Positions 11,040 to 42,187 are shown, counted from the stretch's first letter. The stretch is 64,000 nucleotides of DNA from Macrostomum lignano (GCA_002269645.1 NIVC01000293.1:496001-560000); one strand, 5' to 3'. A program made the numbers and translations. Notes: generated by a model not told the origin, from the letters alone.

Positions 11040-14000
11040 TTAATAGTTCCTAGTACTCGAGTTAATTGAGGATCCCCTTTCGCGAAGCGCATCAGCCGCA
11101 GCAACGGCAGTGCCTGGCTCCACCTCGTCAGGCATAGGCAAGTCCAGCTGTTTCACCAGCTCATATTTGTGACCGCCCACCCCGGCCGCACTTCTAGCCG
11201 CCAGGCGTTGCATTATGATGGCGGTTAGTAGGGCCAGGAATTTGAAGAACATCAGAAAGCCCTGGATGACGAAAAAGTAACGATACTCGTAGCGTTCGGC
11301 TATCATGGCGGTGACGGACGGCGATAGCGCCATGCCGACACCCATGCCGGCCAGGCTGAACGGATACGCCAGGTGTCCCGGCAGCATCGTCATCTCCTCA
11401 CCGGCCGGGAACAGAAACGTTATACTCGGACCCATGCAGAATCCGGACAGGTAGGCCAAGAAATAGCTCAACGTCTCGTTCGAGGCGACAACTTCCCAGT
11501 AGATTAGCGAGCAGGACATCACGAAGGTTGTGGAGCTCAGAATATATTTGAGTCGATTTTTCAACAGGTTCTTTGTGAGCACGGCGATCACCGCTGCAAT
11601 GGCGTAGGTGGACGCTTCTCCGGATGCGAACAGCAGCGTCAGATGGGAGCTCTTAGTCAGCGAAGCCTCCCTACGCCTGACATAGTCAGCTAGGTTCAGC
11701 AGCATGCCGTACGTAACAATACTAGTCATAATTCGATCGAAGAACCAAAGCACTAAATAGGGAACTTTATCCCGTTCAACATCCCAAATAGCACCCAGGC
11801 ATTTCTTATCGTTAGCGTACGGTGGCAAATCTTCGCGTTTCGTAAAAAAACAACTGCCAGTCAGAGTGACAAAGAAGTAGATAACGCCAAGAATTAGGAA
11901 GGCATTTCTCCAGTTGTAAACCTCTATCAGATAGGCGTACAGTTGCACAAACAATATGGACGCTATGGAGCCTCCACTGACTAGTGTCGTAGCCAGAATG
12001 TGGTACGGATGCTGCTTATCGAAGTGTTCGTTGACAACCAGACCAACTACGCTGAGGATTAGCGACGATCCAATGCCGTGAAACAGCGTGTGCGTGAGAA
12101 ACAGCCAGTGCGGATTTGGTACGAACGCGCTGGTGACGCAGGCCAGCAGGATTGCAAGAGTGCCGAGCAGTTGGAACAGCTGGAATCTGCGGCCGTAGGC
12201 TAAAATGATCGACGTGCTCAGCGTGGTGGTCATGTAGCCGAATGCGGCGTACGAGTCGCCGATCCAGTTCAGCTCGGCCAGCGTGATGGTTTGATTGAAT
12301 TCGACGTGCAGTTGGGCTACGAAGACGCCGAATGCGCGCCGTTTGCCGCCCAGAAAGATGACATTGATGGCGGCGAACGCCAGGATTAGCCATGCCCAGG
12401 TCTGCTGGGGTCTCTGCGGGCTGGGCAGTGGCACGAGAATGACTGCTGTTTAGATAATTTAAAAACCATTTTGGCTCACAAAAGTGCAATGTACATGTAT
12501 GTCCTATTCAATGTAGCTACCAAATTCATTACCCAATAAAGGAAACCCTACTCCCTCAAAGACAGGGTGTAAATGTACATCTGATCTGAAGACATGGGTA
12601 CCTCACTAAGAAGACAGGAGTGCCTCACTATAAGAAGACAGGAGTGCCTCACAATAAGAAGACAGGAGTGCCTCACTAAGAACACCAGGAGTGCCTCACT
12701 ATAAGAAGACAGGAGTGCCTCACTTAGAAGACAGGAGTGCCTCACTATAAGAAGACAGGAGTGCCTCACTATAAGAAGATTGGAGTGCCTCACTATAAGA
12801 AGATTGGAGAGCCTCACTTAAAGACAGGAGTGCCTCACTATAAGAAGACAGGAGTGCCTCACTATAAGAAGATTGGAGTGCCTCACTATAAGAAGACAGG
12901 AGTGCCTCACTATAAGAAGACAGGAGTGCCTCACTATAAGAAGACAGGAGTGCCTCACTATAAGAAGACAGGAGTGCCTCACTATAAGAAGACAGGAGTG
13001 CCTCACTATAAGAAGACAGGAGTGCCTCACTATAAGAAGACAGGAGTGCCTCACTATAAGAAGACAGGAGTGCCTCACTATAAGAAGATTGGAGTGCCTC
13101 ACTATAAGAAGACAGGAGTGCCTCACTAAGAAGACAGGAGTGCCTCACTATAAGAAGACAGGAGTGCCTCACTAAGAAGACAGGAGTGCCTCACTATAAG
13201 AAGATTGGAGTGCCTCACTATAAGAAGACAGGAGTGCCTCACTATAAGAAAACAGGAGTGCCTCACTATAAGAAGACAGGAATGCCTCACTAAAAAGACA
13301 GGAGTGCCTCGCTAAGAAGACAGGAATGCCTCACTAAGAAGACAGGAGTGCCTCACTAAGAACACCAGGAGTGCCTCACTATAAGAAGACAGGAGTGCCT
13401 CACTTAGAAGACAGGAGTGCCTCACTATAAGAAGACAGGAGTGCCTCACTATAAGAAGATTGGAGTGCCTCACTATAAGAAGATTGGAGAGCCTCACTTA
13501 AAGACAGGAGTGCCTCACTATAAGAAGACAGGAGTGCCTCACTATAAGAAGATTGGAGTGCCTCACTATAAGAAGACAGGAGTGCCTCACTATAAGAAGA
13601 CAGGAGTGCCTCACTATAAGAAGACAGGAGTGCCTCACAATAAGAAGACAGGAGTGCCTCACTAAGAACACCAGGAGTGCCTCACTATAAGAAGACAGGA
13701 GTGCCTCACTTAGAAGACAGGAGTGCCTCACTATAAGAAGACAGGAGTGCCTCACTATAAGAAGATTGGAGTGCCTCACTATAAGAAGACAGGAGTGCCT
13801 CACTAAGAAGACAGGAGTGCCTCACTATAAGAAGACAGGAGTGCCTCACTAAGAAGACAGGAGTGCCTCACTATAAGAAGATTGGAGTGCCTCACTGCCT
13901 CACTATAAGAAGACAGGAGTGCCTCACTATAAGAAAACAGGAGTGCCTCACTATAAGAAGACAGGAATGCCTCACTAAAAAGACAGGAGTGCCTCGCTAA

Positions 14001-20011: not shown

Positions 20012-20056
20012 TATTTACATATAGAACTATGGCCGAGACTAATTAAGTCGCTTCAC

Positions 20057-22232
<2,176 letters not shown>

Positions 22233-22554
22233 ATAAATGAACAGGACTTCAATTCTATTAAAGGATACATCAGCATCAAATGCTTTCAACCTGATTTCTA
22301 AAAGTGCGTTTTTCGTTGGTGAATTGCGCTGTCGAGGCCTACAACTGGAAACCTTGAAAACAGAAGTAGCCAAGCTGATGAGGAAGAGAGCCTTCCTTCA
22401 TTAGTCATTTCCCCGACAGGTCTGCGCAGCCCCCCCCCCCCGCGTGCCCGGTAAACAACCAGCCATCGGTGCCGCAGACCCAAAAGCCTTACGAACTGGT
22501 GCACTTTCAAGACATCGTAGCTCGAATGCAACTTTTATTCTTTTGCCTCGCCTC

Positions 22555-22875
22555 GCCAGCACCAAGGAGTGCCAGCACTAAGGGGCGCCAGCACCAAGGG
22601 GCGCCAGCACCAAGGGGCGCCAGCACCAAGGGGCGCCAGCACCAAGGGGTGCCAGCACCAAGGGGCGCCAGCACCAAGGGGCGCCAGCACCAAGGGGCGC
22701 CAGCACCAAGGGGTGCCAGCACCAAGGGGCGCCAGCACCAAGGGGCGCCAGCACCAAGGGGTGCCAGCACCAAGGGGCGCCAGCACCAAGGGGCGCCAGC
22801 ACCAAGGGGCGCCAGCACCAAGGGGCGCCAGCACCAAGGGGCGCCAGCACCAAGAGGCGCCAGCACCAAGGGGTG
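22555..22875. repeat. 16-bp GC-rich minisatellite (CCAGCACCAAGGGGCG), ~20 copies
   Basis: Tandem copies. Confidence 0.95.
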
Positions 22876-23871: not shown

Positions 23872-25967
23872 ATGCAAGGCCCTAAAGAGATGGCGGAGCC
23901 ACAGAAAAGACCATGGAAGCCGGACCTTCCACCAGCACCTCCTCAAAACTATCCGCGCAGTCAGAATCGACCAAAATCAGCGGCCGAAACGGCGCAAATG
24001 TTGATCAGCGAGTTCAACGACTACGGGCATCGAACCACGGTGCACGGCCTGGGCCACATGTACCAGTCTACAGACATGAGACGCAAACTGTTCTGGCTAG
24101 CGCTCACCGTTATTGGTTCAATAGCCTGTGGAGTTCACATCTACTTCATTGTAGAAAACTACAACGAGACTCCAGTCAATTCCGTCATTCTCAACGGTGG
24201 GATTCGAGTGACCTTTCCAGACGTGACCCTCTGCAACATGTACCCGATCTCTGAGTCGGTGCAGAACCACGGAGCCGGTGAGATCCGGGGTCACATTAGA
24301 AAATAATTCAAATTCAAAGCTTCATCAAAGCTTCGACGGGATATGAAAATAGCACCAGGAATCGATTTCAAATGGCCAGGAAGTTCTTTCAAATTTTCTG
24401 GGCATCCGAGGACACAAGAGACCTGGCTCACGATGACGACCTATTTCTAGTCTACTGCAGGTACAAAAACCGTAAGTGCACTAGCAAGCATTTCAAAATG
24501 GTGCAGAACATTGTCTACTGGAACTGTTACACATTCACGCCAAAGTTCGATGGAGAGGAAGATGAGGACAGGCGCGTGTACAGTGGCAATGAAGACGACG
24601 GTCTCAACATGATTCTGTACACAAATTCGCACCTCAGAAATATCCATGCGAACAACAGCCTCACGACTGTAGACGGAATTATAAATCTGACACGAAGCGA
24701 AGCAAAACAGGGGTTGCGTCGAGATCAGTCTAATTTTCTCGAACGCTACCTGGTGAATTACAGTCTTTCTTTGAACCAGCTGCTAGCCGGAGACAGGTTG
24801 GAGCCCGATGGAATTCGGGTGATTCTCCACGAGAAAGGAACTTACCCCCACATGGACATGAACAGCGTGATCGTTGGTAACGGAGACTACTCCAAAGTCG
24901 TCTTCTCAATGGAGCGCAAGATTTCCAAGAACCGGCCGGATTTCCCGTGCCGAGAAACCTCCGAGGACGCCGCCGATGAGGAGGTGGAGTACGTTTCCTA
25001 CTACCCTGGCGTCGATGTGAGGTACACCACCAAGAGACCGCCACCGAACTTCAAGAAGTTCAAGCGCGATCGACTCGACTACGTAGTGACTCGAGTCCAG
25101 GACCTGTTCTGGTCGAGCTGCAGCTGCTACACCCACGTGGTCCCGTTCTCGCACTTCAACTCGAAGCTGTGCTACTTTTGCAGAAACGGCACGGACCCAG
25201 TGGAGATCCGACGCACTCTCGAGCGAGTCCACTGCCACGACAGAGTCTACCAGAACCAGCTGAAGAAGAACATCCTCACCTACTTCAGCGACTCGCAGCG
25301 CTTCCAGCCGTGCACTGGCGACGAATACGACGTGAAGATGGGCAGCTCAGCGTGGCCCAGCCAGCGCGACATCATGTTCCTCGTCGACCAGTACGTGATT
25401 CCCGCCTTCCTGCACGAGAGCGTCGGCAACCGGTCCTACAACAGCATCCTGAAGAACACGAGAGTCTACCCGATCCGCGACATCGTCGGGACGACGCCCG
25501 AGCAGGCGATCGGCTCAAAGACTATCAAGTCGTTCAACTGGACCGTGGACGAGTTCCTCATTCGCAAGAGCTTCCTCAAGGTGGCCATCCACGCCGACAG
25601 CCCGACGGGAACGCTCAACGAAGAGGTCGAGAGCTACTCGTTCGCCGAGGCGCTGTCGGAGATCGGCGGCATCTTCGGCCTCTACGCCGGCGTCTCGCTG
25701 CTCACCTTCTTCGAGTTCGTCGAGCTCGCCTACCTGATGGCCACGAAGCCGAAGGAGGTGACGCGGCATGAGAAGGACGGCAAGTCGAAGTTCGCCATGC
25801 TGCAGCAAACCATGGAGGACGGAGAGCTGCCAGCCAGCGAGGTGCTCAAGTACAAGCAGCTGTTCGACCGCGGCAACTGCTGCGCCCTGCCAACGGCCAG
25901 CGCCTCCCAACAGAGCAGGAGCTTCATCATGCAAGCTGAGAGGGAGGACTCTTTTTTCCTTGCTTGA
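23872..25967 (+). pseudogene. DEG/ENaC family channel, intronless, disrupted by a frameshift and in-frame TAA at ~24304-24320
   Basis: ORF 23872-24306 carries the HG motif (TTVHG), TM1 and FPDVTLCN. ORF 24372-25967 carries WNCYTF, GIRVILH, the thumb Cys residues and TM2 (SEIGGIFGLYAGVS). Against the paralog, 21 nt are replaced by 17 nt, with no GT-AG to rescue the frame. Confidence 0.8.
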
Positions 25968-26784
25968 GTTATCGCTGAATTATTTATAAGTGCTTATTTC
26001 GTTAATCATTTAAACTACTTGTCTGTAGCAACGGATGTAAAGTGCAAAAAACAATATAAGTTTCATTGAGCATAACCAGACCACCGTCTTCAGACTTCAA
26101 CAGCAATTTAGGTACAGCTGATAAATAAATTACCCACATAGCACTACTGTCTAGTAGTGCAGATTGATTCGACGTAAGGTCCAGTAGAAAAAGCAATAAA
26201 TAAAGTCTCTAGTTTGTCGAACTGCTGCATCCTAGAAGTTTCAGAGCGTTGGAAGTTGTTCATTATTCAATAAAATGCTATGTAAAACTTGATGTATTAT
26301 AAATGTATAATTTATTACAGAAATTAAAGACAACTTAAATAGTTGTAGTTGTGTTGTGTTTTTGTTATCCCTAGCAGGAGTTTTTAACTGTTGACTTTCA
26401 TTGAATTTACGCCTAAGTTATTGCACTTTCATGTCACTCATAAATCACACAATACTTATTGAATTCTACACTAATTTCCTGCAATAAATGCAAATATATG
26501 TCCGTGCATCGGTTGTCTGTACCAGCCAATATGCTGCTGTCTACTCGTAACTCCGTTATCAATGAAGTTTCGTGGATTTTGTGGATGCTGAATAGACAGA
26601 AAAAAACGATAAATTTTTGGAACTGATTAGAAATCCAAATAATAGAGGTTTTGTTTCAACAAAATTATTCTACTAATTTTAATTAGAAGTTAACAGCGAA
26701 AAAAATTTCTATACATATCGGAAGCTAAGTTTCAGCCTCTGCCGTAAGCATTGAAAACGAAGTGATTTAGAGTTCGTTAAAATC

Positions 26785-27150
26785 CTTCTCTGCCTTCCCC
26801 TTCTGCCTCTGCTCCCCACTCTGCCTCTGCCCCCCCCTCTGCCTCTGCCCCCCCTCTGCCTCTGCTCCCCACTCTGCCTCTGCCCCCTCTGCCTCTGCTC
26901 CCCACTTTGCCTCTGCTCCCCCTCTGCCTCTGCTCCCCCTCTGCCTCTGCCCCCCCTCTGCCTCTGCTCCCCACTCTGCCTCTGCTCCCCCTCTGCCTCT
27001 GCTCCCCACTCTGCCTCTGCTCCCCCTCTGCCTCTGCTCCCCACTTTGCCTCTGCTCCCCCTCTGCCTCTGCTCCCCCTCTGCCTCTGCCCCCCCCCGCC
27101 TCTGCCTCTGCTCCCCCTCTGCCTCTGCTCCCCCTCTGCCTCTGCTGATC
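26785..27150. repeat. 18-19 bp pyrimidine-rich minisatellite (CTCTGCCTCTGCTCCCC..)
   Basis: Tandem copies in the spacer between the two ENaC genes. Confidence 0.92.
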
Positions 27151-29511
27151 CCCCTGCCTCTCCCACTGCGTTTGCTTAACCCACCACCCCACCCTGACTG
27201 CCCCGGCCCCTTGGCAGTCCAATACTAATTGGCTGCCGCACTACATTGTGGTTAGCCGTTTTACGTGCAGTCCCCTGCAGTGTCACCTCCTAGCATATCA
27301 GGTACCTCTCTACCCTAAGCTTGCCCTGATTGGCCGGCTGCTTATGGCGGTTGCGGGTCGGTGCACTGCGGATTAAAGGGTCTTGACCAAATATATACTT
27401 ATTCGCGCAGTGAGCCAGGGGAGACAATCTGGAATCTATAATCGCTCAGTGTCACAACTACAATACATGTAGATTTAAGACTATTGTTTCAAGCGTATCT
27501 TTAGCATGGACAACTAAAGCAACGTATATACAGGACGCGAAACTCACGTTTCATGGAAAAAAAGTTTTGAAGGCCACTTTTCGTCGAAAAATACACTACG
27601 GGGATAAGAAATTTTCACTTTTTCATTATTAAAATTGTATTTGCTTTTGGTAGTAGGCAGACCCAATGTTCATCTTTTGATATGTTGTGCCTTTTTTACA
27701 GCTCTATTGACGTTTGTAAAGCTTTTTGTTCAGAAAACTATGATTCTGTGTTAATTTTTATTCTACGTACAACTGCACATGTCCTGTGTCTAAAAACGAT
27801 TAAAGTGGCACAGCTCGGCTTATTGGTTTTATGAATCTATTTTGTCATTCTTATAGCTGACTGTGTAGCAGTATGTGTAGCATTTTTTAGCATTTTTAGG
27901 TGCAGGTAATGTACGTAGAATGCAAAAATAACATATAGAATCCTAATTTTCTAAACAAAAGCTATATAATTATCAATAGGGCTATAGGAAAGGCACAACA
28001 TATCAAAAGATAAACATTGGGTCTGCCTCTTATCGAAAGCAATAACAATTGTAATATGTAAAAAGTGAAAACTTCCTATTTCCGTAGTGTTGTTTCTTTC
28101 TACGTCCCACGGCTCATCCGGTTCCTCCGGGCCACCAAACGAGCCTCCGTCTTCCCCACCGAGGACAACGCTGCAGACAGGACCGGCAGACCTCCCAGAC
28201 CGGCCCCTCGCCCTAGCCTATGCGGGTCTCTCAGGGATTAGCGGAATGGGCGACGCTCGCCTCCCCGCTGAGTCTTCGGACCGCCCTGCAGCTAAGTCAA
28301 GTAAGTCAAAAGGCCTTTAAAACAGTTTCCATAGATTTCGAGTGTTGCGTTCTTCTACTTTAGTAGTTCTTGATCTTTATCTGACAGGCGATTACAAATT
28401 GCAACTTTCTGCATCAATAACGTACTATAAGGCTTACAAGCTATTTCTTGAATTTCAGTTTTAGGAAAGCAAAATACCAAGGTACATATAAACGCATTTT
28501 GGCTTAGTAACATCCTTCTATAGATCACTATTCCTCAACATATTCGTCCAGAGGTAAGGAAATTTCTGTCTAACAGCAAGGCAGTGTATTAAGGCGGCTC
28601 TTGAAGTAATTTTTGCTCTCTTGAAATGCCGCCCTTCATACTGCAGCAGTTCCACCATATGCTGTACATGCATATAGCTGTAAGGTATTATTCCAGCTAA
28701 GGGGTGCACAGGGATTCACATTGCCTACATGCCCTCTGCCCCAGCCTCGCTGGAAGCACACATTATTTAGGCCAATCCGATCAATCATTCTGACCGTGGT
28801 GAAGATCTTCTTTTTAGCTGCAGTCCACCTGTGAGCCACTCGCATGCAGTGCTCTGGCTGCGTGGGCCTTTTACTGCTTTTCTTTTTTTTGAAGCCGGTT
28901 TGCTGCTCTCTTAGCAAAGTATAACAAACTATCAATTAAATGATTGCAAAAACAATAACTTATATATGTAAGGAAACATACTAAAATTTATTAATTGACA
29001 ATTAAATGAGCAATACTGTTAAGGTTTTATCTGTCCAAATAGCGGTAAAAATGGTATCAACGTGAGTCAAAGGATCAAAAGAGTTCGCATTAATCCCATT
29101 TACAGTGTACCAAAAAAGTTAAAAACCGACGCCCAAACGAAAACGCGAAAGTAAAAATGGCAGCACTTTATAGAACAGTAATGTACAATATATCAAGGGA
29201 TAATACAAAAACATACCAAGCTGCATATTTTTGCTGAAACGTCGTTCGGTAAGATATTTATATTTAGTTCACGGATACACTTGCAAAATTATTCAGAGCA
29301 AGGCAATAGTCAACTTGCAATCCGTTAGGCCCATCATACGAGTTACTGACCTCTAACAACGCGCACCTGACTTTCTCTTCGCAAGGCATGTACAAGCCGC
29401 GCACATGTGCACCGATGAAGCTATTCTGCTTCAAAGTCAACACCAATAATACAATGAACGGGGAACTCAGCCTTCTGAATGCGTGAAAAATTGCGGCCAA
29501 AATTATTCGGG

Positions 29512-31731
29512 TCAAGAAACAATCACCGGACGTCGAACTGAACCCTCCCTCTCAGCTTGCATGATGAAGCTCCTGCTCTGCTGGGAGGCGCTGGCCGTTG
29601 GCAGGGCGCAGCAGTTGCCGCGGTCGAACAGCTGCTTGTACTTGAGCACCTCGCTGGCTGGCAGCTCTCCGTCCTCCATGGTTTGCTGCAGCATGGCGAA
29701 CTTCGACTTGCCGTCCTTCTCATGCCGCGTCACCTCCTTCGGCTTCGTGGCCATCAGGTAGGCGAGCTCGACGAACTCGAAGAAGGTGAGCAGCGAGACG
29801 CCGGCGTAGAGGCCGAAGATGCCGCCGATCTCCGACAGCGCCTCGGCGAACGAGTAGCTCTCGACCTCTTCGTTGAGCGTTCCCGTCGGGCTGTCGGCGT
29901 GGATGGCCACCTTGAGGAAGCTCTTGCGAATGAGGAACTCGTCCACGGTCCAGTTGAACGACTTGATAGTCTTTGAGCCGATCGCCTGCTCGGGCGTCGT
30001 CCCGACGATGTCGCGGATCGGGTAGACTCTCGTGTTCTTCAGGATGCTGTTGTAGGACCGGTTGCCGACGCTCTCGTGCAGGAAGGCGGGAATCACGTAC
30101 TGGTCGACGAGGAACATGATGTCGCGCTGGCTGGGCCACGCTGAGCTGCCCATCTTCACGTCGTATTCGTCGCCAGTGCACGGCTGGAAGCGCTGCGAGT
30201 CGCTGAAGTAGGTGAGGATGTTCTTCTTCAGCTGGTTCTGGTAGACTCTGTCGTGGCAGTGGACTCGCTCGAGAGTGCGTCGGATCTCCACTGGGTCCGT
30301 GCCGTTTCTGCAAAAGTAGCACAGCTTCGAGTTGAAGTGCGAGAACGGGACCACGTGGGTGTAGCAGCTGCAGCTCGACCAGAACAGGTCCTGGACTCGA
30401 GTCACTACGTAGTCGAGTCGATCGCGCTTGAACTTCTTGAAGTTCGGTGGCGGTCTCTTGGTGGTGTACCTCACATCGACGCCAGGGTAGTAGGAAACGT
30501 ACTCCACCTCCTCATCGGCGGCGTCCTCGGAGGTTTCTCGGCACGGGAAATCCGGCCGGTTCTTGGAAATCTTGCGCTCCATTGAGAAGACGACTTTGGA
30601 GTAGTCTCCGTTGCCAACGATCACGCTGTTCATGTCCATGTGGGGGTAAGTTCCTTTCTCGTGGAGAATGACCCGAATTCCATCGGGCTCCATTTTATCG
30701 CCTGCCAGCAGCTGGTTCAGAGACAGATTGTAGTTCACCAGGTAGCGCTCTAAATAGTTTGACTTATCACCGTTTGAACTGTCTTTACCGTTATTTTCCT
30801 CATCGTAGAAGCCCTTTGTCGTTGTCAATGCGTTACTAGCGTGAATATTTCTGAGGTGTGAATTGGTGTACATGATGAGGTTCAAGCCCTCGTCTTCGTT
30901 GCCGCTGTACACGCGCCTGTCTTCCTCCTCCTCTCCGTCGAATTTTGGCGTGAATGTGTAGCAGTTCCAGTAGTCGATGTTTTGAACCATTTTGAACTGC
31001 TTGTTAGAGCAGGGACGACTTTTATACCTGCAGTAGACTAGAAATAGGTCGTCGTCGTGAGCCAGGTCTCTTGTGTCCTCGGATGCCCAGAAAATTTGAA
31101 AGAACTTCCTGGCCATTTTAAATCTATCCTTGGTGCTGTTGTCCATTCCGGCTGAGGCTTTGATGAAGCCGCGAAAGAATCTCCAGTATTTTCTAATGTG
31201 ACCCCTGATCTCACCGGCTCCGTGGTTCTGCACCGACTCCGAGATCGGGTACATGTTGCAGAGGGTCACGTCTGGAAAATTCACGTGGACTCCACCGTTT
31301 AGAATGACGGAATTAACTGGAGTTTCGTTGTAGTTGGCCACAATGAAGTAGATGTGAATGCCGCAGGCAAAGCATCCAACGATAGTGATGAGGAGCCAAA
31401 ATAACTTTCGTCTGACATCTGTGGACTGGTACATGTGGCCCAGGCCGTGTACCGTGGTTCGATGCCCGTAGTCGTTGAACTCGCTGATCAACAACTTGAC
31501 TGTTTCAGAGGATTTTTTCTTCTTTCGCTGGTCCATACGCGCCTGCTGAGGTCGATAGGCAGCAGGTTGTGCAGCTGGTTGTTGCTGCTGTATGATGCCT
31601 TCTTGTGGTTGCTGAGCCGTCGATTGGGGCGAAATCTGCGACGCCTGCTGCGAGGCTTGCTGCGATCTGTGATCGCTTGCTTCTTCAGCATTGCTGCTGT
31701 TTCCATCAGGCATGATCGGCTGCAGTATCAT
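29512..31731 (-). CDS. DEG/ENaC (amiloride-sensitive sodium channel superfamily) subunit, 739 aa, intronless coding region
   Basis: HG motif (HRTTVHGLGH), TM1, FPDVTLCNMYP, WNCYTF, PDGIRVILHEKGTYP, QPCTGDEYDVKMGSSAWPS, TM2 with the GxS selectivity filter (GVS). Confidence 0.93.
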   Translation of the reverse strand: MILQPIMPDGNSSNAEEASDHRSQQASQQASQISPQSTAQQPQEGIIQQQQPAAQPAAYRPQQARMDQRKKKKSSETVKLLISEFNDYGHRTTVHGLGHMYQSTDVRRKLFWLLITIVGCFACGIHIYFIVANYNETPVNSVILNGGVHVNFPDVTLCNMYPISESVQNHGAGEIRGHIRKYWRFFRGFIKASAGMDNSTKDRFKMARKFFQIFWASEDTRDLAHDDDLFLVYCRYKSRPCSNKQFKMVQNIDYWNCYTFTPKFDGEEEEDRRVYSGNEDEGLNLIMYTNSHLRNIHASNALTTTKGFYDEENNGKDSSNGDKSNYLERYLVNYNLSLNQLLAGDKMEPDGIRVILHEKGTYPHMDMNSVIVGNGDYSKVVFSMERKISKNRPDFPCRETSEDAADEEVEYVSYYPGVDVRYTTKRPPPNFKKFKRDRLDYVVTRVQDLFWSSCSCYTHVVPFSHFNSKLCYFCRNGTDPVEIRRTLERVHCHDRVYQNQLKKNILTYFSDSQRFQPCTGDEYDVKMGSSAWPSQRDIMFLVDQYVIPAFLHESVGNRSYNSILKNTRVYPIRDIVGTTPEQAIGSKTIKSFNWTVDEFLIRKSFLKVAIHADSPTGTLNEEVESYSFAEALSEIGGIFGLYAGVSLLTFFEFVELAYLMATKPKEVTRHEKDGKSKFAMLQQTMEDGELPASEVLKYKQLFDRGNCCALPTASASQQSRSFIMQAEREGSVRRPVIVS

Positions 31732-37100: not shown

Positions 37101-40100
37101 TTCACTCATGGCTTGCTAAGCCTTTCTCCCGGGGTGGCAAAGCATAAGGAAGTTTGGGTAAGCTAATGGCCTCTCCCCGTGCAAAGCCCGCCTGTGAGTG
37201 CGTGCTGCGGGGCCGCGTGTGCGTGCAGTAGAGGGATTAGCGAGTCTTGGCACAGAATGGCAGTAGGAAGGTTGCAACCCCATGCTAACGCGTCCCTTCG
37301 CCCTGAGCAATCTAAACTGTAGACAGTACATGTTCGCCTCATACTACTCTTAGTAATCAAAGTCGCAAGCCAGCCTCGCTCACAGCCACAAAGGATCCCC
37401 TGCTGAGAAATCCTCCAGGATTGAGCCCAGAGTTCCCGATCATGCCCCAAGCAGAGTCCCTGTACTCGGCTGCATGCGTCTCCCCTGTTAGCCTAAATCC
37501 CCTGGTAACCAATCCAGGCGGGGCTCTAGCCTCGAGAGGTCTGGTAGAAAGATCCAGGTGCGCCAGGTCACATAGAGTGGTGGCAGCCACTCGGTCATAC
37601 CATGACCGAGTGACCAACTATTGCACCTTGGCTACAGGTGGGGTCCATGTGGGTCCTTGGCCCTCTGGTCACGAAGCGCTACCAAAGCTACTAATCATGT
37701 GGGCGGGACAGTCTGGTGCTGGAGGTCCGTCAGGTCATTGCCCGGTCATAGGCAGCCTACGGTCATTGCCCCCTCTAGCCATGCGTTCGTCTCTCTACGG
37801 AGCGGACAGGCGACAAGGGCGGTTACATCAAGTGCTCAATAGCGATTCTCTAGAATGCTCAATAGTGGTTTCAAGAGTGCTCAATAGTGATTTCAAGAGT
37901 GCTCAATAGAGATTCTCAAGAGTGCTCAATAGAGATTCTCAAGAGTGTTCAATAGTGATTCTCTGGAGTGATTAACAGTGATTATGAAGAGAGATTAATC
38001 ACGTTTCAATATGCTTTTTTGATGCTTCAAAATTACAGTAGGAACGGATCGACAAATGCATTATTTGGTTTTCGAAGAATTAGAAAAAGAACGATTTTTT
38101 ATGATTTTAAAACAACCAACAAGTCAAACTCGGTCTCACCAAGAGTGCTGAGGTCCCAGGTACACAAACCGATAGTCGCTATCAGTCTGGTCTAGACAAT
38201 ATTCATTCAGCCAATCAGATGTGAAACAGTCTGGCACTGTGTATGCGTGATAATCTGGATATAGCAATTGAAAATGCCAATCCTTCAAATACAGAATTTG
38301 ATTATGCTTTGCAGTTGCTTCTCCGAACTGCGAACTACTAATAGCTGACCAATATTCGCCAAAATAATCACTGGCCGACATGCGAATCACTGGGTGACTG
38401 TCGCATTCTTCTCGATTGCACTGCGACACGGGCAGATCTCGGCTGTCTGAAGTTCCAATTGAAACAGTTAAGATTTTTTTAAGATTTCGAAAGATCTCAA
38501 AGATCTCTAGATGCGCGGCGCATTGAAGGCTGCGTACGGCTGTTCAGTCCAAGGACTGCTGGGGGGTCGCCACACAGCCTCAATTACCCCAGCTAATGCT
38601 GGCACCCATTTTACAGCTGGGTGAACTGAAGCAATGCAGAGTTAAGTGTCCTACTTAAGGACACAAATTTTTTCGAGTGGATCGCGAAACAGTGAGTCCG
38701 ATGCTAATAGGACAAGAATCACTCGCACACAGGGGCGTCGCCATGGATTTTATGGTGGGGGGGACAAAGCCAATAATTATACACATAAATGACTAAATTC
38801 TTGTATATGTACATTATTTTAAGAATCGGTGTTGTAGGCACTCATTTTAGCGCCGAAGGCACTCATTTTAGCGCCGCAGGCACTCATTTTGGCGCCACAG
38901 GCACTCATTTTAGCGCCGCAGGCACTCATTTTAGCGCCGCAGGCACTCATTTTAGCGTCGCAGGCACTCATTTTAGCGCCTCAGGCACTCATTTTAGCGC
39001 CGCAGGCACTCATTTTGGCGCCGCAGGCAGTCATTTTGGCGCCGCAGGAACTCATTTTAGCGCCGAAGGCATTCATTTTAGCGCCGCAGGCACTCATTTT
39101 GGTGCCACAGGCACTCATTTTAGCGCCGCAGGCACTCATTTTAGCGTCGCAGGCACTCATTTTAGCGCCTCAGGCACTCATTTTAGCGTCGCAGGCACTC
39201 ATTTTAGCGCCTCAGGCACTCATTTTAGCGCCTCAGGCACTCATTTTAGCGCCGCAGGCACTCATTTTAGCGCCTCAGGCACTCATTTTAGCGTCGCAGG
39301 CACTCATTTTAGCGCCTCAGGCACTCATTCTAGCGCCTCACGCACTCATTTTAGCGCCTCAGGCACTCATTTTAGCGCCGCAGGCACTCATTTTAGCGCC
39401 GCAGGCACTCATTTTGGCGCCGCAGGCAGTCATTTTGGCGCCGCAGGAACTCATTTTAGCGCCGAAGGCATTCATTTTAGCGCCGCAGGCACTCATTTTG
39501 GTGCCACAGGCACTCATTTTAGCGCCGCAGGCACTCATTTTAGCGTCGCAGGCACTCATTTTAGCGCCTCAGGCACTCATTTTAGCGTCGCAGGCACTCA
39601 TTTTAGCGCCTCAGGCACTCATTTTAGCGCCTCAGGCACTCATTTTAGCGCCGCAGGCACTCATTTTAGCGCCTCAGGCACTCATTTTAGCGTCGCAGGC
39701 ACTCATTTTAGCGCCTCAGGCACTCATTCTAGCGCCTCACGCACTCATTTTAGCGCCTCAGGCACTCATTTTAGCGCCGCAGGCACTCATTTTGGCGCCG
39801 CAGGCACTCATTTTAGCGCCGCAGGCACTCATTTTAGCGCCGCAGGCACTCATTTTAGCGCCGCAGGCACTCATTTTAGCGCCTCAGGCACTCATTTTAG
39901 CGCCTCAGGCACTCATTTTAGCGCCGCAGGCACTCATTTTAGCGCCGCAGGCAGTCATTTTGGCGTTGCAGGCAGTCATTTTAGCGCCGCAGGCACTCAT
40001 TTTAGCGCCTCAGGCACTCATTTTAGCGCCGCAGGCACTCATTTTAGCGCCGCAGGGACTCATTTTGGCGCCGCAGGCAGTCATTTTGGCGCCGCAGGAA

Positions 40101-42187
40101 CTCATTTTAGCGCCGAAGGCACTCATTTTAGCGCCGCAGGCACTCATTTTGGCGCCGCAGGCACTCATTTTAGCGCCGCAGGCACTCATTTTAGCGCCGC
40201 AGGCACTCATTTTAGCGCCGCAGGCACTCATTTTAGCGCCTCAGGCACTCATTTTAGCGCCTCAGGCACTCATTTTAGCGCCGCAGGCACTCATTTTAGC
40301 GCCGCAGGCAGTCATTTTGGCGTTGCAGGCAGTCATTTTAGCGCCGCAGGCACTCATTTTAGCGCCTCAGGCACTCATTTTAGCGCCTCAGGCACTCATT
40401 TTAGCGCCGCAGGCACTCATTTTGGCGCCGCAGGCAGTCATTTTGGCGCCGCAGGAACTCATTTTAGCGCCGAAGGCACTCATTTTAGCGCCGCAGGCAC
40501 TCATTTTGGTGCCACAGGCACTCATTTTAGCGCCGCAGGCACTCATTTTAGCGTCGCAGGCACTCATTTTATCGCCTCAGGCACTCGTTTTAGCGTCGCA
40601 GGCACTCATTTTAGCGCCTCAGGCACTCATTCTAGCGCCTCAGGCACTCATTTTAGCGCCTCAGGCACTCATTCTAGCGCCTCAGGCACTCATTTTTGCG
40701 CCTCAGGCACTCATTTTAGCGCCGCAGGCACTCATTTTGGCGCCGCAGGCACTCATTTTAGCGCCGCAGGCACTCATTTTAGCGCCGCAGGCACTCATTT
40801 TAGCGCCGCAGGCACTCATTTTAGCGCCTCACGCACTCATTTTAGCGCCTCAGGCACTCATTTTAGCGCCGCAGGCACTCATTTTAGCGCCGCAGGCAGT
40901 CATTTTGGCGTTGCAGGCACTCATTTTAGCGCCGCAGGCACTCATTTTAGCGCCTCAGGCACTCATTTTAGCGCCTCAGGCACTCATTTTAGCGCCGCAG
41001 GCACTCATTTTGGCGCCGCAGGCAGTCATTTTGGCGCCGCAGGAACTCATTTTAGCGCCGAAGGCACTCATTTTAGCGCCGCAGGCACTCATTTTGGTGC
41101 CACAGGCACTCATTTTAGCGCCGCAGGCACTCATTTTAGCGTCGCAGGCACTCATTTTATCGCCTCAGGCACTCGTTTTAGCGTCGCAGGCACTCATTTT
41201 AGCGCCTCAGGCACTCATTCTAGCGCCTCAGGCACTCATTTTTGCGCCTCAGGCACTCATTTTAGCGCCGCAGGCACTCATTTTGGCGCCGCAGGCAGTC
41301 ATTTTAGCGCCACAGGCACTCATTTTAGCGCCGCAGGCACTCATTTTAGCGCCTCAGGCACTCATTTTAGCGCCGCAGGCACTCATTTTAGCGCCGCAGG
41401 CACTCATTTTAGCTCCGCAGGCACTCATTTTAGCGCCGCAGGCACTCATTTTAGCGCCGCAGGCACTCATTTTAGCTCCGCAGGCACTCATTTTAGCGCC
41501 GCAGGCACTCATTTTAGCGCCGCAGGCACTCATTTTAGCTCCGCAGGCACTCATTTTAGCGCCGCAGGCACTCATTTTAGCGCCGCAGGCACTCATTTTA
41601 GCTCCGCAGGCACTCATTTTAGCGCCGCAGGCACTATGTTTTGTCGCCCTGCAGCAAAATTATTGATTTCCATAACGGGTCTCAAGGTGGGGTGGGGAAG
41701 AATTGGCAATGTCCCCCATAGCTTTTACTGAAGGGGACATGTCCCCCCTGTCCCCCCCATACATTTTTTCAGTCATAGTCCTGCTATGTAGTTTTAAACA
41801 AGCCAAACTTTACCTTTGCACAGACGCCACAGGAAGCCGTAATTCACTGAGCCATCCGAGTTAATCCAGTCAGTTCGAGCTGGCCAACCGGCCGTGGCGA
41901 AATGTTTTAACAAAACCGGTTGATTTGCGTGTAAATATCTGCGGTGAATCAGAAGTTTATATACGAAGTTCTTTAGTCAAAAATGGTTTAAGGGGGTCTA
42001 GTTACATGTACAAGGAGCAATGGACAGTGATTATTTCTAACTTTCTACCCTTTCAATTGCATAAAAAAGCATCTACAAACCTGCGATAAATCTCTTTCGG
42101 ATCACACTCCTCAGTTAAAACCGTCACGGGCAGTTTCTCTCCGAGTTGTAGTTTCTCAAACCTCGCAACTCGATCGGCAGAATCCAT
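34167..42187 (-). CDS. JMJD4: JmjC-domain 2-oxoglutarate/Fe(II) oxygenase JMJD4. Exons 42187-42081, 41938-41814, 38446-38140, 35271-34884, 34475-34167.
   Basis: LYLKDWH, FTSDWLNE, DYRFVYLGP, W|TPFHCDVF (HxD), VPSGWHHQV, SINHNW. All junctions are GT-AG with matching phase. Confidence 0.93.
35450..35610. repeat. ~21-bp minisatellite (GTGCTCAATAGTGATTTCAAGA), left part; resumes at 37831-37990
   Basis: The same unit occurs on both sides of the 2.2 kb insertion. Confidence 0.88.
35611..37830 (+). mobile_element. 2220-bp non-coding insertion with TG..CA ends and a 10-bp terminal inverted repeat (solo-LTR-like or non-autonomous TIR element) in a JMJD4 intron
   Basis: Begins TGATGTAACC and ends GGTTACATCA. 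Flanked by an exact 71-bp direct repeat (35540-35610 = 37831-37901). Carries an internal Pol II promoter motif cluster and no long coding ORF. Confidence 0.8.
36462..36552 (+). promoter_or_regulatory. Compact promoter inside the insertion: AP-1 (TGACTCA 36462), CRE (TGACGTCA 36472), CCAAT (36492), TATAAAA (36546)
   Basis: Consensus motifs in canonical order. Two further TGACTCA at 36039 and 36050; splice-donor-like CCG|GTAAGT at 36884. Confidence 0.55.
38552..38666 (-). mobile_element. CORE-SINE-like fragment (headless)
   Basis: CCCATTTTACAGCTGGGTGAACTGAAGCAATGCAGAGTTAAGTGTCCTACTTAAGGACACA resembles the recalled MIR/CORE consensus. The adjacent ~60 bp match 48208-48265 in inverted orientation. 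Confidence 0.6.
38836..41634. repeat. 21-bp minisatellite (GCACTCATTTTAGCGCCGCAG), ~133 copies, in a JMJD4 intron
   Basis: Tandem copies with recurring variant blocks; source of the 980-aa and 925-aa repeat ORFs. Confidence 0.98.

What the first reader, a model, noticed from the sequence alone, without database searches (positions are those of the whole stretch)
23872..31731. Tail-to-tail DEG/ENaC pair with constant pore halves and variable finger halves
Seen: two intronless channel genes converge across a ~3.6 kb spacer. About 1.15 kb (+24799-25947 versus -30690-29544) is nearly identical; I saw only a couple of synonymous differences, at its 5' edge. The N-termini and the finger region differ strongly (NNSLTTVDGIINLTRSEAKQGLRRDQ versus SNALTTTKGFYDEENNGKDSSNGDK). 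Established: the finger domain sets ligand or stimulus specificity in DEG/ENaCs, and palindrome arms are homogenised by gene conversion. Inference: an inverted-repeat system that keeps thumb/TM2 constant while the sensing region diversifies. Read-through could also form long dsRNA.
Basis: partly seen in the sequence, partly recalled or inferred. Interest (0 to 1): 0.75.

Follow-up and report, generated by a model that had tools for sequence, protein, structure and literature searches.

The report
Inverted flatworm sodium-channel gene pair, part-homogenised
Two copies of a sodium-channel gene in the flatworm Macrostomum lignano face each other tail to tail, and DNA copying between them has kept their back halves almost identical while the front halves drifted apart; this is a clear but ordinary case of gene conversion, not a new kind of system.

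Summary
The window is Macrostomum lignano contig NIVC01000293.1. Two intronless DEG/ENaC genes (Pfam ASC; closest solved relative FaNaC) converge across a 3.6-kb spacer. Arms 24799-25947 and 29544-30692 differ at 3 of 1149 bases, all synonymous. Synonymous divergence steps from 0.6-2.0 to 0.012 at one sharp breakpoint (0 of 2000 permutations). Constraint does not explain this: against a singleton paralogue the identical block evolves faster than the 5' half. A sister subgenome contig has the same palindrome, the same two arm-specific differences, and two variants shared by both arms of one locus only, so arm-to-arm conversion continued after the subgenomes split. GC3 is raised in the block, as GC-biased conversion predicts. 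Corrections: the + copy here is broken by a clustered lesion at 24304-24318, but is intact (699 aa) in the sister contig; it has no gene model in either. The finger helices are conserved. Hypervariability is confined to 26 codons of the beta6-beta7 loop, and that loop is equally variable in the singleton paralogue. TM1 lies in the diverged half. Best reading: multi-epoch, heterology-limited gene conversion in an inverted duplicate, a known phenomenon. An adaptive constant/variable system is not shown.

The parts
29512..31731 (-). Copy B: intact intronless DEG/ENaC gene, 739 aa. It is identical to P0003 and 99.7% identical to PAA71250.1 / BOX15_Mlig030741g1.
   Evidence: Single ORF. Pfam ASC E = 2e-51 over residues 88-656. 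Gene model present in three contigs. Profile aligns end to end with FaNaC 7yvb and 8on7.
23872..25967 (+). Copy A: the inverted paralogue, disrupted in this window into ORFs 23872-24306 (144 aa) and 24372-25967 (531 aa). It is intact at 699 aa in sister contig NIVC01001178.1 (L001 15608-17707, minus strand).
   Evidence: No gene model in either contig.
24304..24318 (+). Lesion private to this contig: an in-frame TAA, 7 clustered substitutions and a 4-nt deletion within codons for K-Y-W-R-F-F-R-G at the start of the finger helices.
   Evidence: The four-gene alignment shows that A in L001 matches B across this site. It may be a real mutation or a Pilon mis-correction.
24799..25947 (+). Near-identical block, arm A (beta7 through thumb, knuckle, palm and TM2 to the C-terminal tail). 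It has 3 synonymous differences from arm B.
29544..30692 (-). Near-identical block, arm B.
23986..24647 (+). Diverged 5' homologous half of A (pre-TM1 HG motif 24034-24057, TM1 24085-24153, finger helices, beta-ball). It pairs with B 30841-31506 at about 84-85% nt identity.
   Evidence: dS 0.61, dN 0.08. Mosaic of synonymous divergence with an old island at TM1.
24648..24728 (+). Hypervariable segment of A (27 codons, ANNSLTTVDGIINLTRSEAKQGLRRDQ): the beta6-beta7 loop plus the start of a clade-specific insertion. It includes a 3-nt indel relative to B.
   Evidence: dN 0.76 with dS saturated.
30763..30840 (-). Hypervariable segment of B (26 codons, ASNALTTTKGFYDEENNGKDSSNGDK).
24729..24800 (+). 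Bridge (24 codons, SNFLERYL...GDRL). The protein is conserved but synonymous sites are saturated (dS about 2). It ends at the conversion breakpoint and pairs with B 30691-30762.
25948..29543 (.). Spacer of 3596 nt, GC 0.43. It holds the unrelated last codons and 3' flanks of both genes, AATAAA signals at 26124 (A) and 28992 (B), a 17/35-nt tandem array at 26796-27146, and an imperfect hairpin core at 27588-28095.

Best explanation
An intronless FaNaC-like DEG/ENaC gene of Macrostomum lignano was duplicated in inverted, tail-to-tail orientation long ago, about as long ago as its split from the nearest singleton paralogue. Since then the two arms have exchanged sequence by intrachromosomal (arm-to-arm) gene conversion in several epochs.

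- The inner 1.15 kb next to the spacer (beta7 to the C-terminal tail, including TM2) is still being homogenised.
- Most of the 5' half was last homogenised at an intermediate time.
- Two islands, TM1 and the beta6-beta7 loop with its flanks, have escaped conversion since the duplication.

The outer limit of the active tract is set by the heterology of the hypervariable loop region: more than 50% mismatch, a 3-nt indel, and saturated synonymous sites in the bridge. Strand exchange cannot cross this. The inner limit is the end of homology at the spacer. The 'constant back / variable front' mosaic is therefore a mechanical outcome of heterology-limited conversion, not a dedicated system.

Shown: the anatomy, the dS step, the post-split shared variants, the GC3 contrast, and the domain map. 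Inferred: the heterology barrier as the cause of the boundary, recurrence rather than one or two events, and the evolutionary timing.
For: - **Same structure in independent contigs:** the palindrome is present and colinear in two contigs representing different subgenomes, at 95-98% identity. Three homeologous subgenomes are documented for this assembly (PMC10733133).
- **dS step:** dS is 0.61 in the 5' half, about 2.0 in the bridge and 0.012 in the block. The breakpoint falls at KM/RL|EPDG with 0 of 2000 permutations reaching it.
- **Not constraint:** against the outgroup the block has dN 0.29 and omega 0.29-0.30, higher than the 5' half at dN 0.21-0.23.
- **Old arm-specific differences:** 24878 and 25910 are arm-specific in both loci, and both lie near the block edges.
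- **Exchange after the split:** 25485 and 25502 are G/G in both arms of the window and A/A in both arms of L001, and the outgroup has A at 25485.
- **GC bias:** GC3 is 0.62-0.68 in the 5' half against 0.86 in the block (p < 1e-7), rising towards the centre. The singleton outgroup is flat at 0.78/0.84. The non-converted parts show net S>W decay, 61 against 28. GC-biased arm-to-arm conversion is documented in palindromes (PMC8981503, PMC3723533).
- **Mosaic 5' half:** A-B synonymous-codon difference is 0.44-0.52 at TM1 and near the loop, equal to the outgroup level, but 0.15-0.21 elsewhere.
- **Both copies long functional:** omega is about 0.13 for B and about 0.26 for A in the 5' half.
Against: - The assembly was polished with Pilon using short genomic reads and RNA-seq reads. 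The count of only 3 differences may therefore be an underestimate, and the 24304-24318 lesion may be an artefact.
- Post-split conversion rests on two linked sites 17 nt apart, which could be a single event.
- The GC3 contrast could also arise from a single replacement of the block.
- The heterology-barrier cause of the boundary is inferred, not shown.
- There are no population, read-level or expression data.
Confidence: 0.8

Rival explanations
1. Adaptive modular system. Selection maintains two channel subunits with different sensing parts (beta6-beta7 loop, TM1) and a shared thumb/TM2/C-tail. Conversion is tolerated or favoured in the back half, for example to keep assembly interfaces matched, and selected against around the diverged sites.
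For: - Divergence islands at TM1 and around the loop coincide with the amino-acid differences, while flanking regions are homogenised. This is the pattern modelled for duplicates under divergent selection with gene conversion (PMC3924837, listed).
- The loop aligns with the FMRFamide-pocket loop of FaNaC1.
- Both copies show long-term purifying selection.
Against: - The same correlation is expected neutrally, because differences persist wherever tracts happened not to reach.
- The loop is equally divergent in the singleton outgroup.
- Copy A has no gene model in either contig and is broken in one.
- Omega in the loop cannot be estimated because dS is saturated.
- Three other paralogue loci show no such pairing.
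Confidence: 0.12
2. A single recent event rather than recurrent conversion. One replacement of the 3' 1.15 kb of one copy by the other (a long conversion tract or a template-switch duplication) occurred shortly before the subgenomes diverged, with little exchange since.
For: - The two arm-specific differences are shared by both loci, so the main homogenisation predates the subgenome split.
- Only one short post-split tract is seen.
Against: - The post-split shared variants show that at least one later exchange occurred.
- The GC3 gradient rising towards the palindrome centre, and the mosaic 5' half, suggest repeated events over a long time.
Confidence: 0.2
3. Assembly or polishing artefact. 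The identical block reflects a collapse, or Pilon homogenisation of two diverged paralogues, or a chimeric join.
For: - Pilon polishing used multi-mapping Illumina and RNA-seq reads.
- 36% of the assembly length is reported to lie in chimeric scaffolds.
- The third contig ends about 0.2 kb before arm A.
Against: - Two independently assembled contigs carry the same structure, the same boundaries and the same two arm-specific SNPs.
- Polishing cannot turn about 85% identity into 99.7% with a codon-sharp edge.
- The whole 7.9-kb unit is shorter than typical PacBio reads.
- The GC3 shift is a long-term signature.
Confidence: 0.04
4. Hairpin or dsRNA-producing locus. Read-through across the spacer yields a 1.2-kb perfect stem that feeds small-RNA pathways.
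For: The arms are 98-99.7% complementary over 1.2 kb on one strand if they are co-transcribed.
Against: - Canonical AATAAA signals lie 157 nt (A) and 520 nt (B) past the stops, far from the opposite arm.
- No transcript model spans the spacer.
- No small-RNA data were available.
Confidence: 0.04

Closest known systems
Arm-to-arm gene conversion in genomic palindromes (human Y and X palindromes; PMC3723533, PMC8981503, PMC3403216)
   Same: Inverted arms around a unique spacer. Arm identity is far above what the age predicts. Paralogous variants are transferred between arms. There is a GC-biased signature. No spacer inversion is needed.
   Different: The arms here are about 2 kb rather than tens to hundreds of kb, and each arm is essentially one coding sequence. 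Only the inner 1.15 kb is currently homogenised. The locus is autosomal, in a hermaphroditic neopolyploid flatworm.
Partial concerted evolution of duplicated genes with divergence islands (reviews PMC3924837, PMC3924832; Caenorhabditis paralogues PMC3966223). From my own knowledge: the tail-to-tail RHD/RHCE pair, and the inverted Hsp70 and Amy pairs of Drosophila.
   Same: Mosaic genes in which conversion tracts homogenise part of the coding sequence while other parts stay diverged. The inverted orientation favours conversion over deletion.
   Different: I found no earlier description for a DEG/ENaC gene. That rests only on reading the titles from two literature searches, neither aimed at this question; the one search aimed at it failed on syntax. 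Here the tract boundary coincides with a ligand-pocket loop.
FMRFamide-gated sodium channels (FaNaC; PDB 7yvb, 8on7)
   Same: Best solved-structure match (phmmer 2e-23; family profile 1e-158 and 2e-101). HG motif, FPxVTxCN, the conserved cysteines and the G-x-S filter all align.
   Different: Only about 25-30% identical. There is a clade-specific insertion of about 31-37 residues in the beta6-beta7 loop. The ligand is unknown. The closest relatives are almost all M. lignano paralogues.

Membership tests
DEG/ENaC (Pfam ASC, PF00858) | Full-length match to the family model above the curated cut-off | tested here: met
   B scores 175.9 bits (cut-off 23.6) over model positions 1-455 of 455. Both ORFs of A also match.
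DEG/ENaC (Pfam ASC, PF00858) | Two transmembrane helices around a large cysteine-rich ectodomain, a pre-TM1 His-Gly motif, post-TM1 FPxVTxCN, and a G/S-x-S filter in TM2 | tested here: met
   H95-G96, FPDVTLCN and G644-V-S646 align with the equivalent motifs of FaNaC (GIS) and ASIC1 (GAS). Ten conserved cysteines are invariant or nearly so across 32 relatives.
DEG/ENaC (Pfam ASC, PF00858) | Trimeric amiloride-sensitive Na+ channel activity | not testable with these tools
   This needs heterologous expression. The AlphaFold model was unusable (mean pLDDT 29).
FaNaC (peptide-gated subgroup) | Gating by FMRFamide-type peptide, with conserved pocket residues in alpha1-alpha3 and the beta6-beta7 loop | tested here: inconclusive
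   FaNaC is the best structural relative. However, pocket residues are poorly conserved even among true FaNaCs, and the loop here is hypervariable and carries an insertion. I make no membership claim.
Palindrome / inverted duplicate with arm-to-arm gene conversion | Inverted arms on one molecule separated by a unique spacer | tested here: met
   The arrangement is reproduced in a second contig.
Palindrome / inverted duplicate with arm-to-arm gene conversion | Synonymous identity between arms far above that of adjacent homologous sequence, and not explained by constraint | tested here: met
   dS is 0.012 against 0.61-2.0. The outgroup shows the block is not slow-evolving.
Palindrome / inverted duplicate with arm-to-arm gene conversion | Derived variants shared by both arms of one lineage but absent from a sister lineage | tested here: met
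   Sites 25485 and 25502. These are only two linked sites, so at least one event is shown.
Palindrome / inverted duplicate with arm-to-arm gene conversion | GC-biased outcome | tested here: met
   GC3 is 0.86 in the block against 0.62-0.68 outside it, and the outgroup is flat. The one polarised conversion-fixed change is A>G. This is suggestive, not proof.
Palindrome / inverted duplicate with arm-to-arm gene conversion | Conversion events observed in populations or pedigrees | not testable with these tools
   No read-level or population data were available.

The most novel reading that the evidence does not exclude
The mosaic is maintained by selection. A and B would encode two subunits of a peptide- or ligand-gated channel that differ in the pocket-lining beta6-beta7 loop and in TM1. 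Arm-to-arm conversion keeps their thumb, palm, TM2 and C-tail identical so that they stay co-assembly-compatible. That would be a natural 'constant region / variable region' arrangement for an ion channel, with the divergence islands protected from conversion by divergent selection.
Probability: 0.1. Interest if true: 0.6.

Novelty: new member of a known kind. Interest (0 to 1): 0.35.

Why it matters
- It is a compact, well-resolved example of partial concerted evolution. One 2-kb gene carries three age classes of sequence, a codon-sharp conversion boundary, and a GC-bias signature.
- The three subgenomes of a neopolyploid act as built-in replicates that time the events.
- It is a caution for anyone building DEG/ENaC phylogenies or dating duplications in Macrostomum, because the 5' and 3' halves of these genes give different trees and ages.
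- It flags an unannotated paralogue, intact in contig NIVC01001178.1.
- It points to a lineage-specific, FaNaC-like channel clade with a hypervariable pocket loop. This clade could be worth testing for ligand specificity in a flatworm that is tractable for transgenesis.
- It does not reveal a new mechanism.

Tried and rejected
2. **Direct sequence alignment of the middle region to solved structures.** It found nothing relevant. I replaced it with a 32-sequence family profile, which aligned end to end.
3. **Word-indexed homologue searches.** Both the single-sequence and the profile search returned only the two M. lignano clusters. The exhaustive search was needed.
4. **Looking up the + copy's 531-aa ORF in public assemblies.** It is not on record.
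5. **'The + copy is an old pseudogene'.** Rejected. It is intact in the sister contig, and its branch has omega of about 0.26.
6. **'Identity is due to constraint or codon bias'.** Rejected by the comparison with the outgroup.
7. **'The spacer is the decayed centre of a larger ancient palindrome'.** There is no significant residual inverted homology outside the central hairpin: SW score 17 against shuffles of mean 13.3 and maximum 18.
8. **Hidden frame-shifted homology in the hypervariable segment.** The nucleotide alignment shows three mutually divergent sequences with only the flanks conserved.
9. **Literature search on DEG/ENaC plus gene conversion.** It failed on term syntax and I did not repeat it.
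10. **My first assumption that the window was contig NIVC01001178.1 (P0001).** This was wrong and was corrected.


Full report
**1. Identity of the sequence**

The intact minus-strand ORF (29512-31731, 739 aa) exactly matches a Macrostomum lignano protein (P0003). The reverse complement of window 19512-41731 is identical to locus L003, which is contig NIVC01000293.1 of assembly GCA_002269645.1 (Mlig_3_7). The window is typical of this repeat-rich flatworm genome, with large microsatellite and minisatellite arrays on both sides.

**2.

- The repeat finder reports inverted arms 24723-25947 / 29544-30768 (1225 nt, 98% complementary, 3596 nt apart). Weaker outer arms of 84-85% reach 23986 / 31506.
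- The base-by-base alignment shows that 24799-25947 pairs with 30692-29544 and differs at only three positions: 24821, 24878 and 25910. All three are synonymous, and the 382 encoded residues are identical.
- Homology ends abruptly at 25947/29544, 7-10 codons before the stops. The last codons and the 3' flanks are unrelated.
- Both genes are DEG/ENaC: Pfam ASC with E = 2e-51 for B, and both fragments of A match.
- Correction: in this window copy A is not a single ORF. A clustered lesion at 24304-24318 (TAA, seven substitutions and a 4-nt deletion) splits it into ORFs of 144 and 531 aa.

**3. Natural replicates**

Mlig_3_7 is known to contain three homeologous subgenomes (S, L1, L2) with about 1.9-2.4% SNP divergence (PMC10733133). 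I found three copies of this locus.

| Locus | Contig | Relation to the window |
|---|---|---|
| L003 | NIVC01000293.1 | The window itself |
| L004 | NIVC01003962.1 | About 99% identical; the contig ends about 0.2 kb before arm A |
| L001 | NIVC01001178.1 | 95-98% identical, colinear over the whole palindrome, no spacer inversion |

In L001 copy A is an intact 699-aa ORF that reads KYWRFFRGF, exactly like B, across the site that is broken in the window. So the lesion is private to one contig.

The assembly was polished with Pilon using both Illumina and RNA-seq reads (PMC5730564), so I cannot exclude that the lesion is a mis-correction. Copy A has no gene model in either contig, although the annotation is transcript-based. 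Copy B has a model in all three contigs.

**4. The identity is due to exchange, not constraint**

Nei-Gojobori estimates for the two intact genes of L001:

| Region | Codons | dS | dN |
|---|---|---|---|
| 5' half | 222 | 0.61 | 0.08 (omega 0.13) |
| Bridge | 24 | about 2.0 | 0.10 |
| 3' block | 382 | 0.012 | 0.002 |

- A maximal chi-square scan on synonymous codons puts the breakpoint exactly at KM/RL|EPDG (chi2 = 110; 0 of 2000 permutations reach it).
- Against the nearest paralogue (P0005, 688 aa, an intact singleton in L005), the block evolves faster at the protein level (dN 0.29, omega 0.29-0.30) than the 5' half (dN 0.21-0.23). Its dS to that paralogue is about 1.0. Selection therefore cannot explain the near-identity.

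**5. Timing, from the four-gene comparison**

- Sites 24878 and 25910 are arm-specific in both loci. The main homogenisation therefore predates the subgenome split. Both sites lie within 80 nt and 38 nt of the block edges.
- Sites 25485 and 25502 are G/G in both arms of the window and A/A in both arms of L001, and the outgroup has A at 25485. This requires at least one arm-to-arm transfer after the split. The tract is at least 18 nt long and lies within 24879-25909.
- The remaining differences are singletons on single genes.

**6. Signature of long-term, GC-biased conversion**

- GC3 in A and B is 0.62-0.68 in the 5' half but 0.86 in the block (p < 1e-7). It rises from about 0.72 at the boundary to 0.9-1.0 near TM2.
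- The singleton outgroup is flat (0.78 vs 0.84, p = 0.08).
- The non-converted parts show net GC decay, with S>W 61 against W>S 28.
- GC-biased arm-to-arm conversion is well documented for palindromes (PMC8981503, PMC3723533).

**7. The 5' half is itself a mosaic**

| Region | Fraction of same-amino-acid codons that differ, A vs B |
|---|---|
| Around TM1 | 0.44 |
| Flanking the hypervariable loop | 0.50-0.52 |
| Rest of the 5' half | 0.15-0.21 |
| Either copy vs the outgroup | mostly 0.4-0.55 |

The contrast between 'near the loop' and 'far from it' gives Fisher p = 0.012. So the duplication is roughly as old as the split from the outgroup. Most of the 5' half was homogenised at an intermediate time, and two islands have never been converted.

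**8. Domain map**

A 32-sequence family profile aligns end to end with Aplysia FaNaC (7yvb, E = 1e-158), Malacoceros FaNaC1 (8on7, 2e-101) and ASIC1 (1e-71). I mapped B onto the same profile.

- The FaNaC1 beta6-beta7 loop D234-G241 lines the FMRFamide pocket together with finger helices alpha1-alpha3 (PMC11026163). It aligns with B 298-307, which is the start of the hypervariable segment.
- The hypervariable segment continues into a clade-specific insertion of about 31-37 residues. The second half of that insertion is conserved.
- The conversion boundary lies immediately before beta7 (EPDGIRVILHE).

So 'finger region' is right in the broad sense (the proximal finger). But:
- The finger helices differ at only about 6 residues between A and B.
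- TM1 and the HG motif sit in the diverged half.
- The 26-codon loop is equally divergent in the singleton outgroup, so its variability does not depend on the palindrome.

**9. Copy A**

Polarising the 5'-half substitutions with the outgroup gives 18 synonymous and 18 nonsynonymous changes on the A branch, against 22 and 11 on the B branch. That is omega of roughly 0.26 and 0.13. A evolves faster but has been constrained for most of its history.

**10. Family context**

- The closest relatives are almost all M. lignano proteins at 29-39% identity. Only 13 proteins in 1.84 billion representatives reach E <= 1e-30. This is a lineage-specific expansion.
- A, B and P0005 are intronless, whereas P0006 and P0010 have 1 and 5 introns.
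- None of the loci of three more distant paralogues (P0005/P0002, P0006, P0010) shows a second copy within +-10 kb.

**11. dsRNA idea**

AATAAA signals lie at 26124 (157 nt past the stop of A) and at 28992 (520 nt past the stop of B). No transcript model crosses the spacer. A hairpin transcript is physically possible, but nothing here supports it.

**12. Verdict**

This is a real inverted DEG/ENaC gene pair undergoing partial concerted evolution through heterology-limited, probably GC-biased, arm-to-arm gene conversion. It is a known phenomenon in a new gene family and organism. The adaptive 'constant pore / variable finger system' is not demonstrated. It survives only as a minority reading, because the divergence islands coincide with TM1 and a pocket loop. 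Read-level validation, sister-species loci, expression data and oocyte recordings would settle the open points.

Noticed in passing
window 27560-28120 (L001 13631-14191, L004 13610-14170): The spacer core is an imperfect hairpin: arms 27588-27726 / 27957-28095 at 81%, and about 500 nt self-complementary at 72%. Its centre (27841.5) is only 96 nt from the centre of the large palindrome. All 561 nt are 100% identical in all three subgenome copies, although the surrounding spacer differs by about 1% plus indels. It could be a foldback element or a remnant of how the inverted duplication formed.
   Followed up: partly
L001 15608-17707 (minus strand), contig NIVC01001178.1: An intact 699-aa DEG/ENaC ORF, the sister-subgenome version of copy A, has no gene model in the public annotation and is absent from the protein collection.
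   Followed up: yes
L002 11560-11760 vs L005: The outgroup paralogue shows the same pattern of one damaged subgenome copy. P0002 (L002) has indels through the TM2 region and ends early, while P0005 (L005) is intact at 688 aa. These may be real decay after genome duplication or assembly and polishing errors.
   Followed up: partly
window 23872-31731; L005, L006, L007: A, B and P0005 are intronless, whereas the more distant M. lignano paralogues P0006 and P0010 have 1 and 5 introns. This suggests a retrogene origin for the subclade.
   Followed up: partly
L004 (contig NIVC01003962.1), end of contig, equivalent to window ~26170: The third copy of the locus ends about 0.2 kb before arm A would begin. 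This is a contig break at the inverted repeat.
   Followed up: no
window 38836-41648: A 21-nt-period tandem array of about 134 copies (about 92% identity between copies) lies inside a 980-aa ORF (38789-41731, + strand). It has only weak low-complexity Pfam hits and no gene model.
   Followed up: no
window 20039-22373 and 22554-22873: A 2.3-kb microsatellite with 8/12-nt period and a 16-nt x 20 array lie immediately upstream of copy A. These arrays produce long spurious ORFs.
   Followed up: no
window 11040-12434 (minus strand): A 464-aa ORF matches the Major Facilitator Superfamily (MFS_1, E = 1.3e-19). It is probably an exon or an intronless transporter gene.
   Followed up: no
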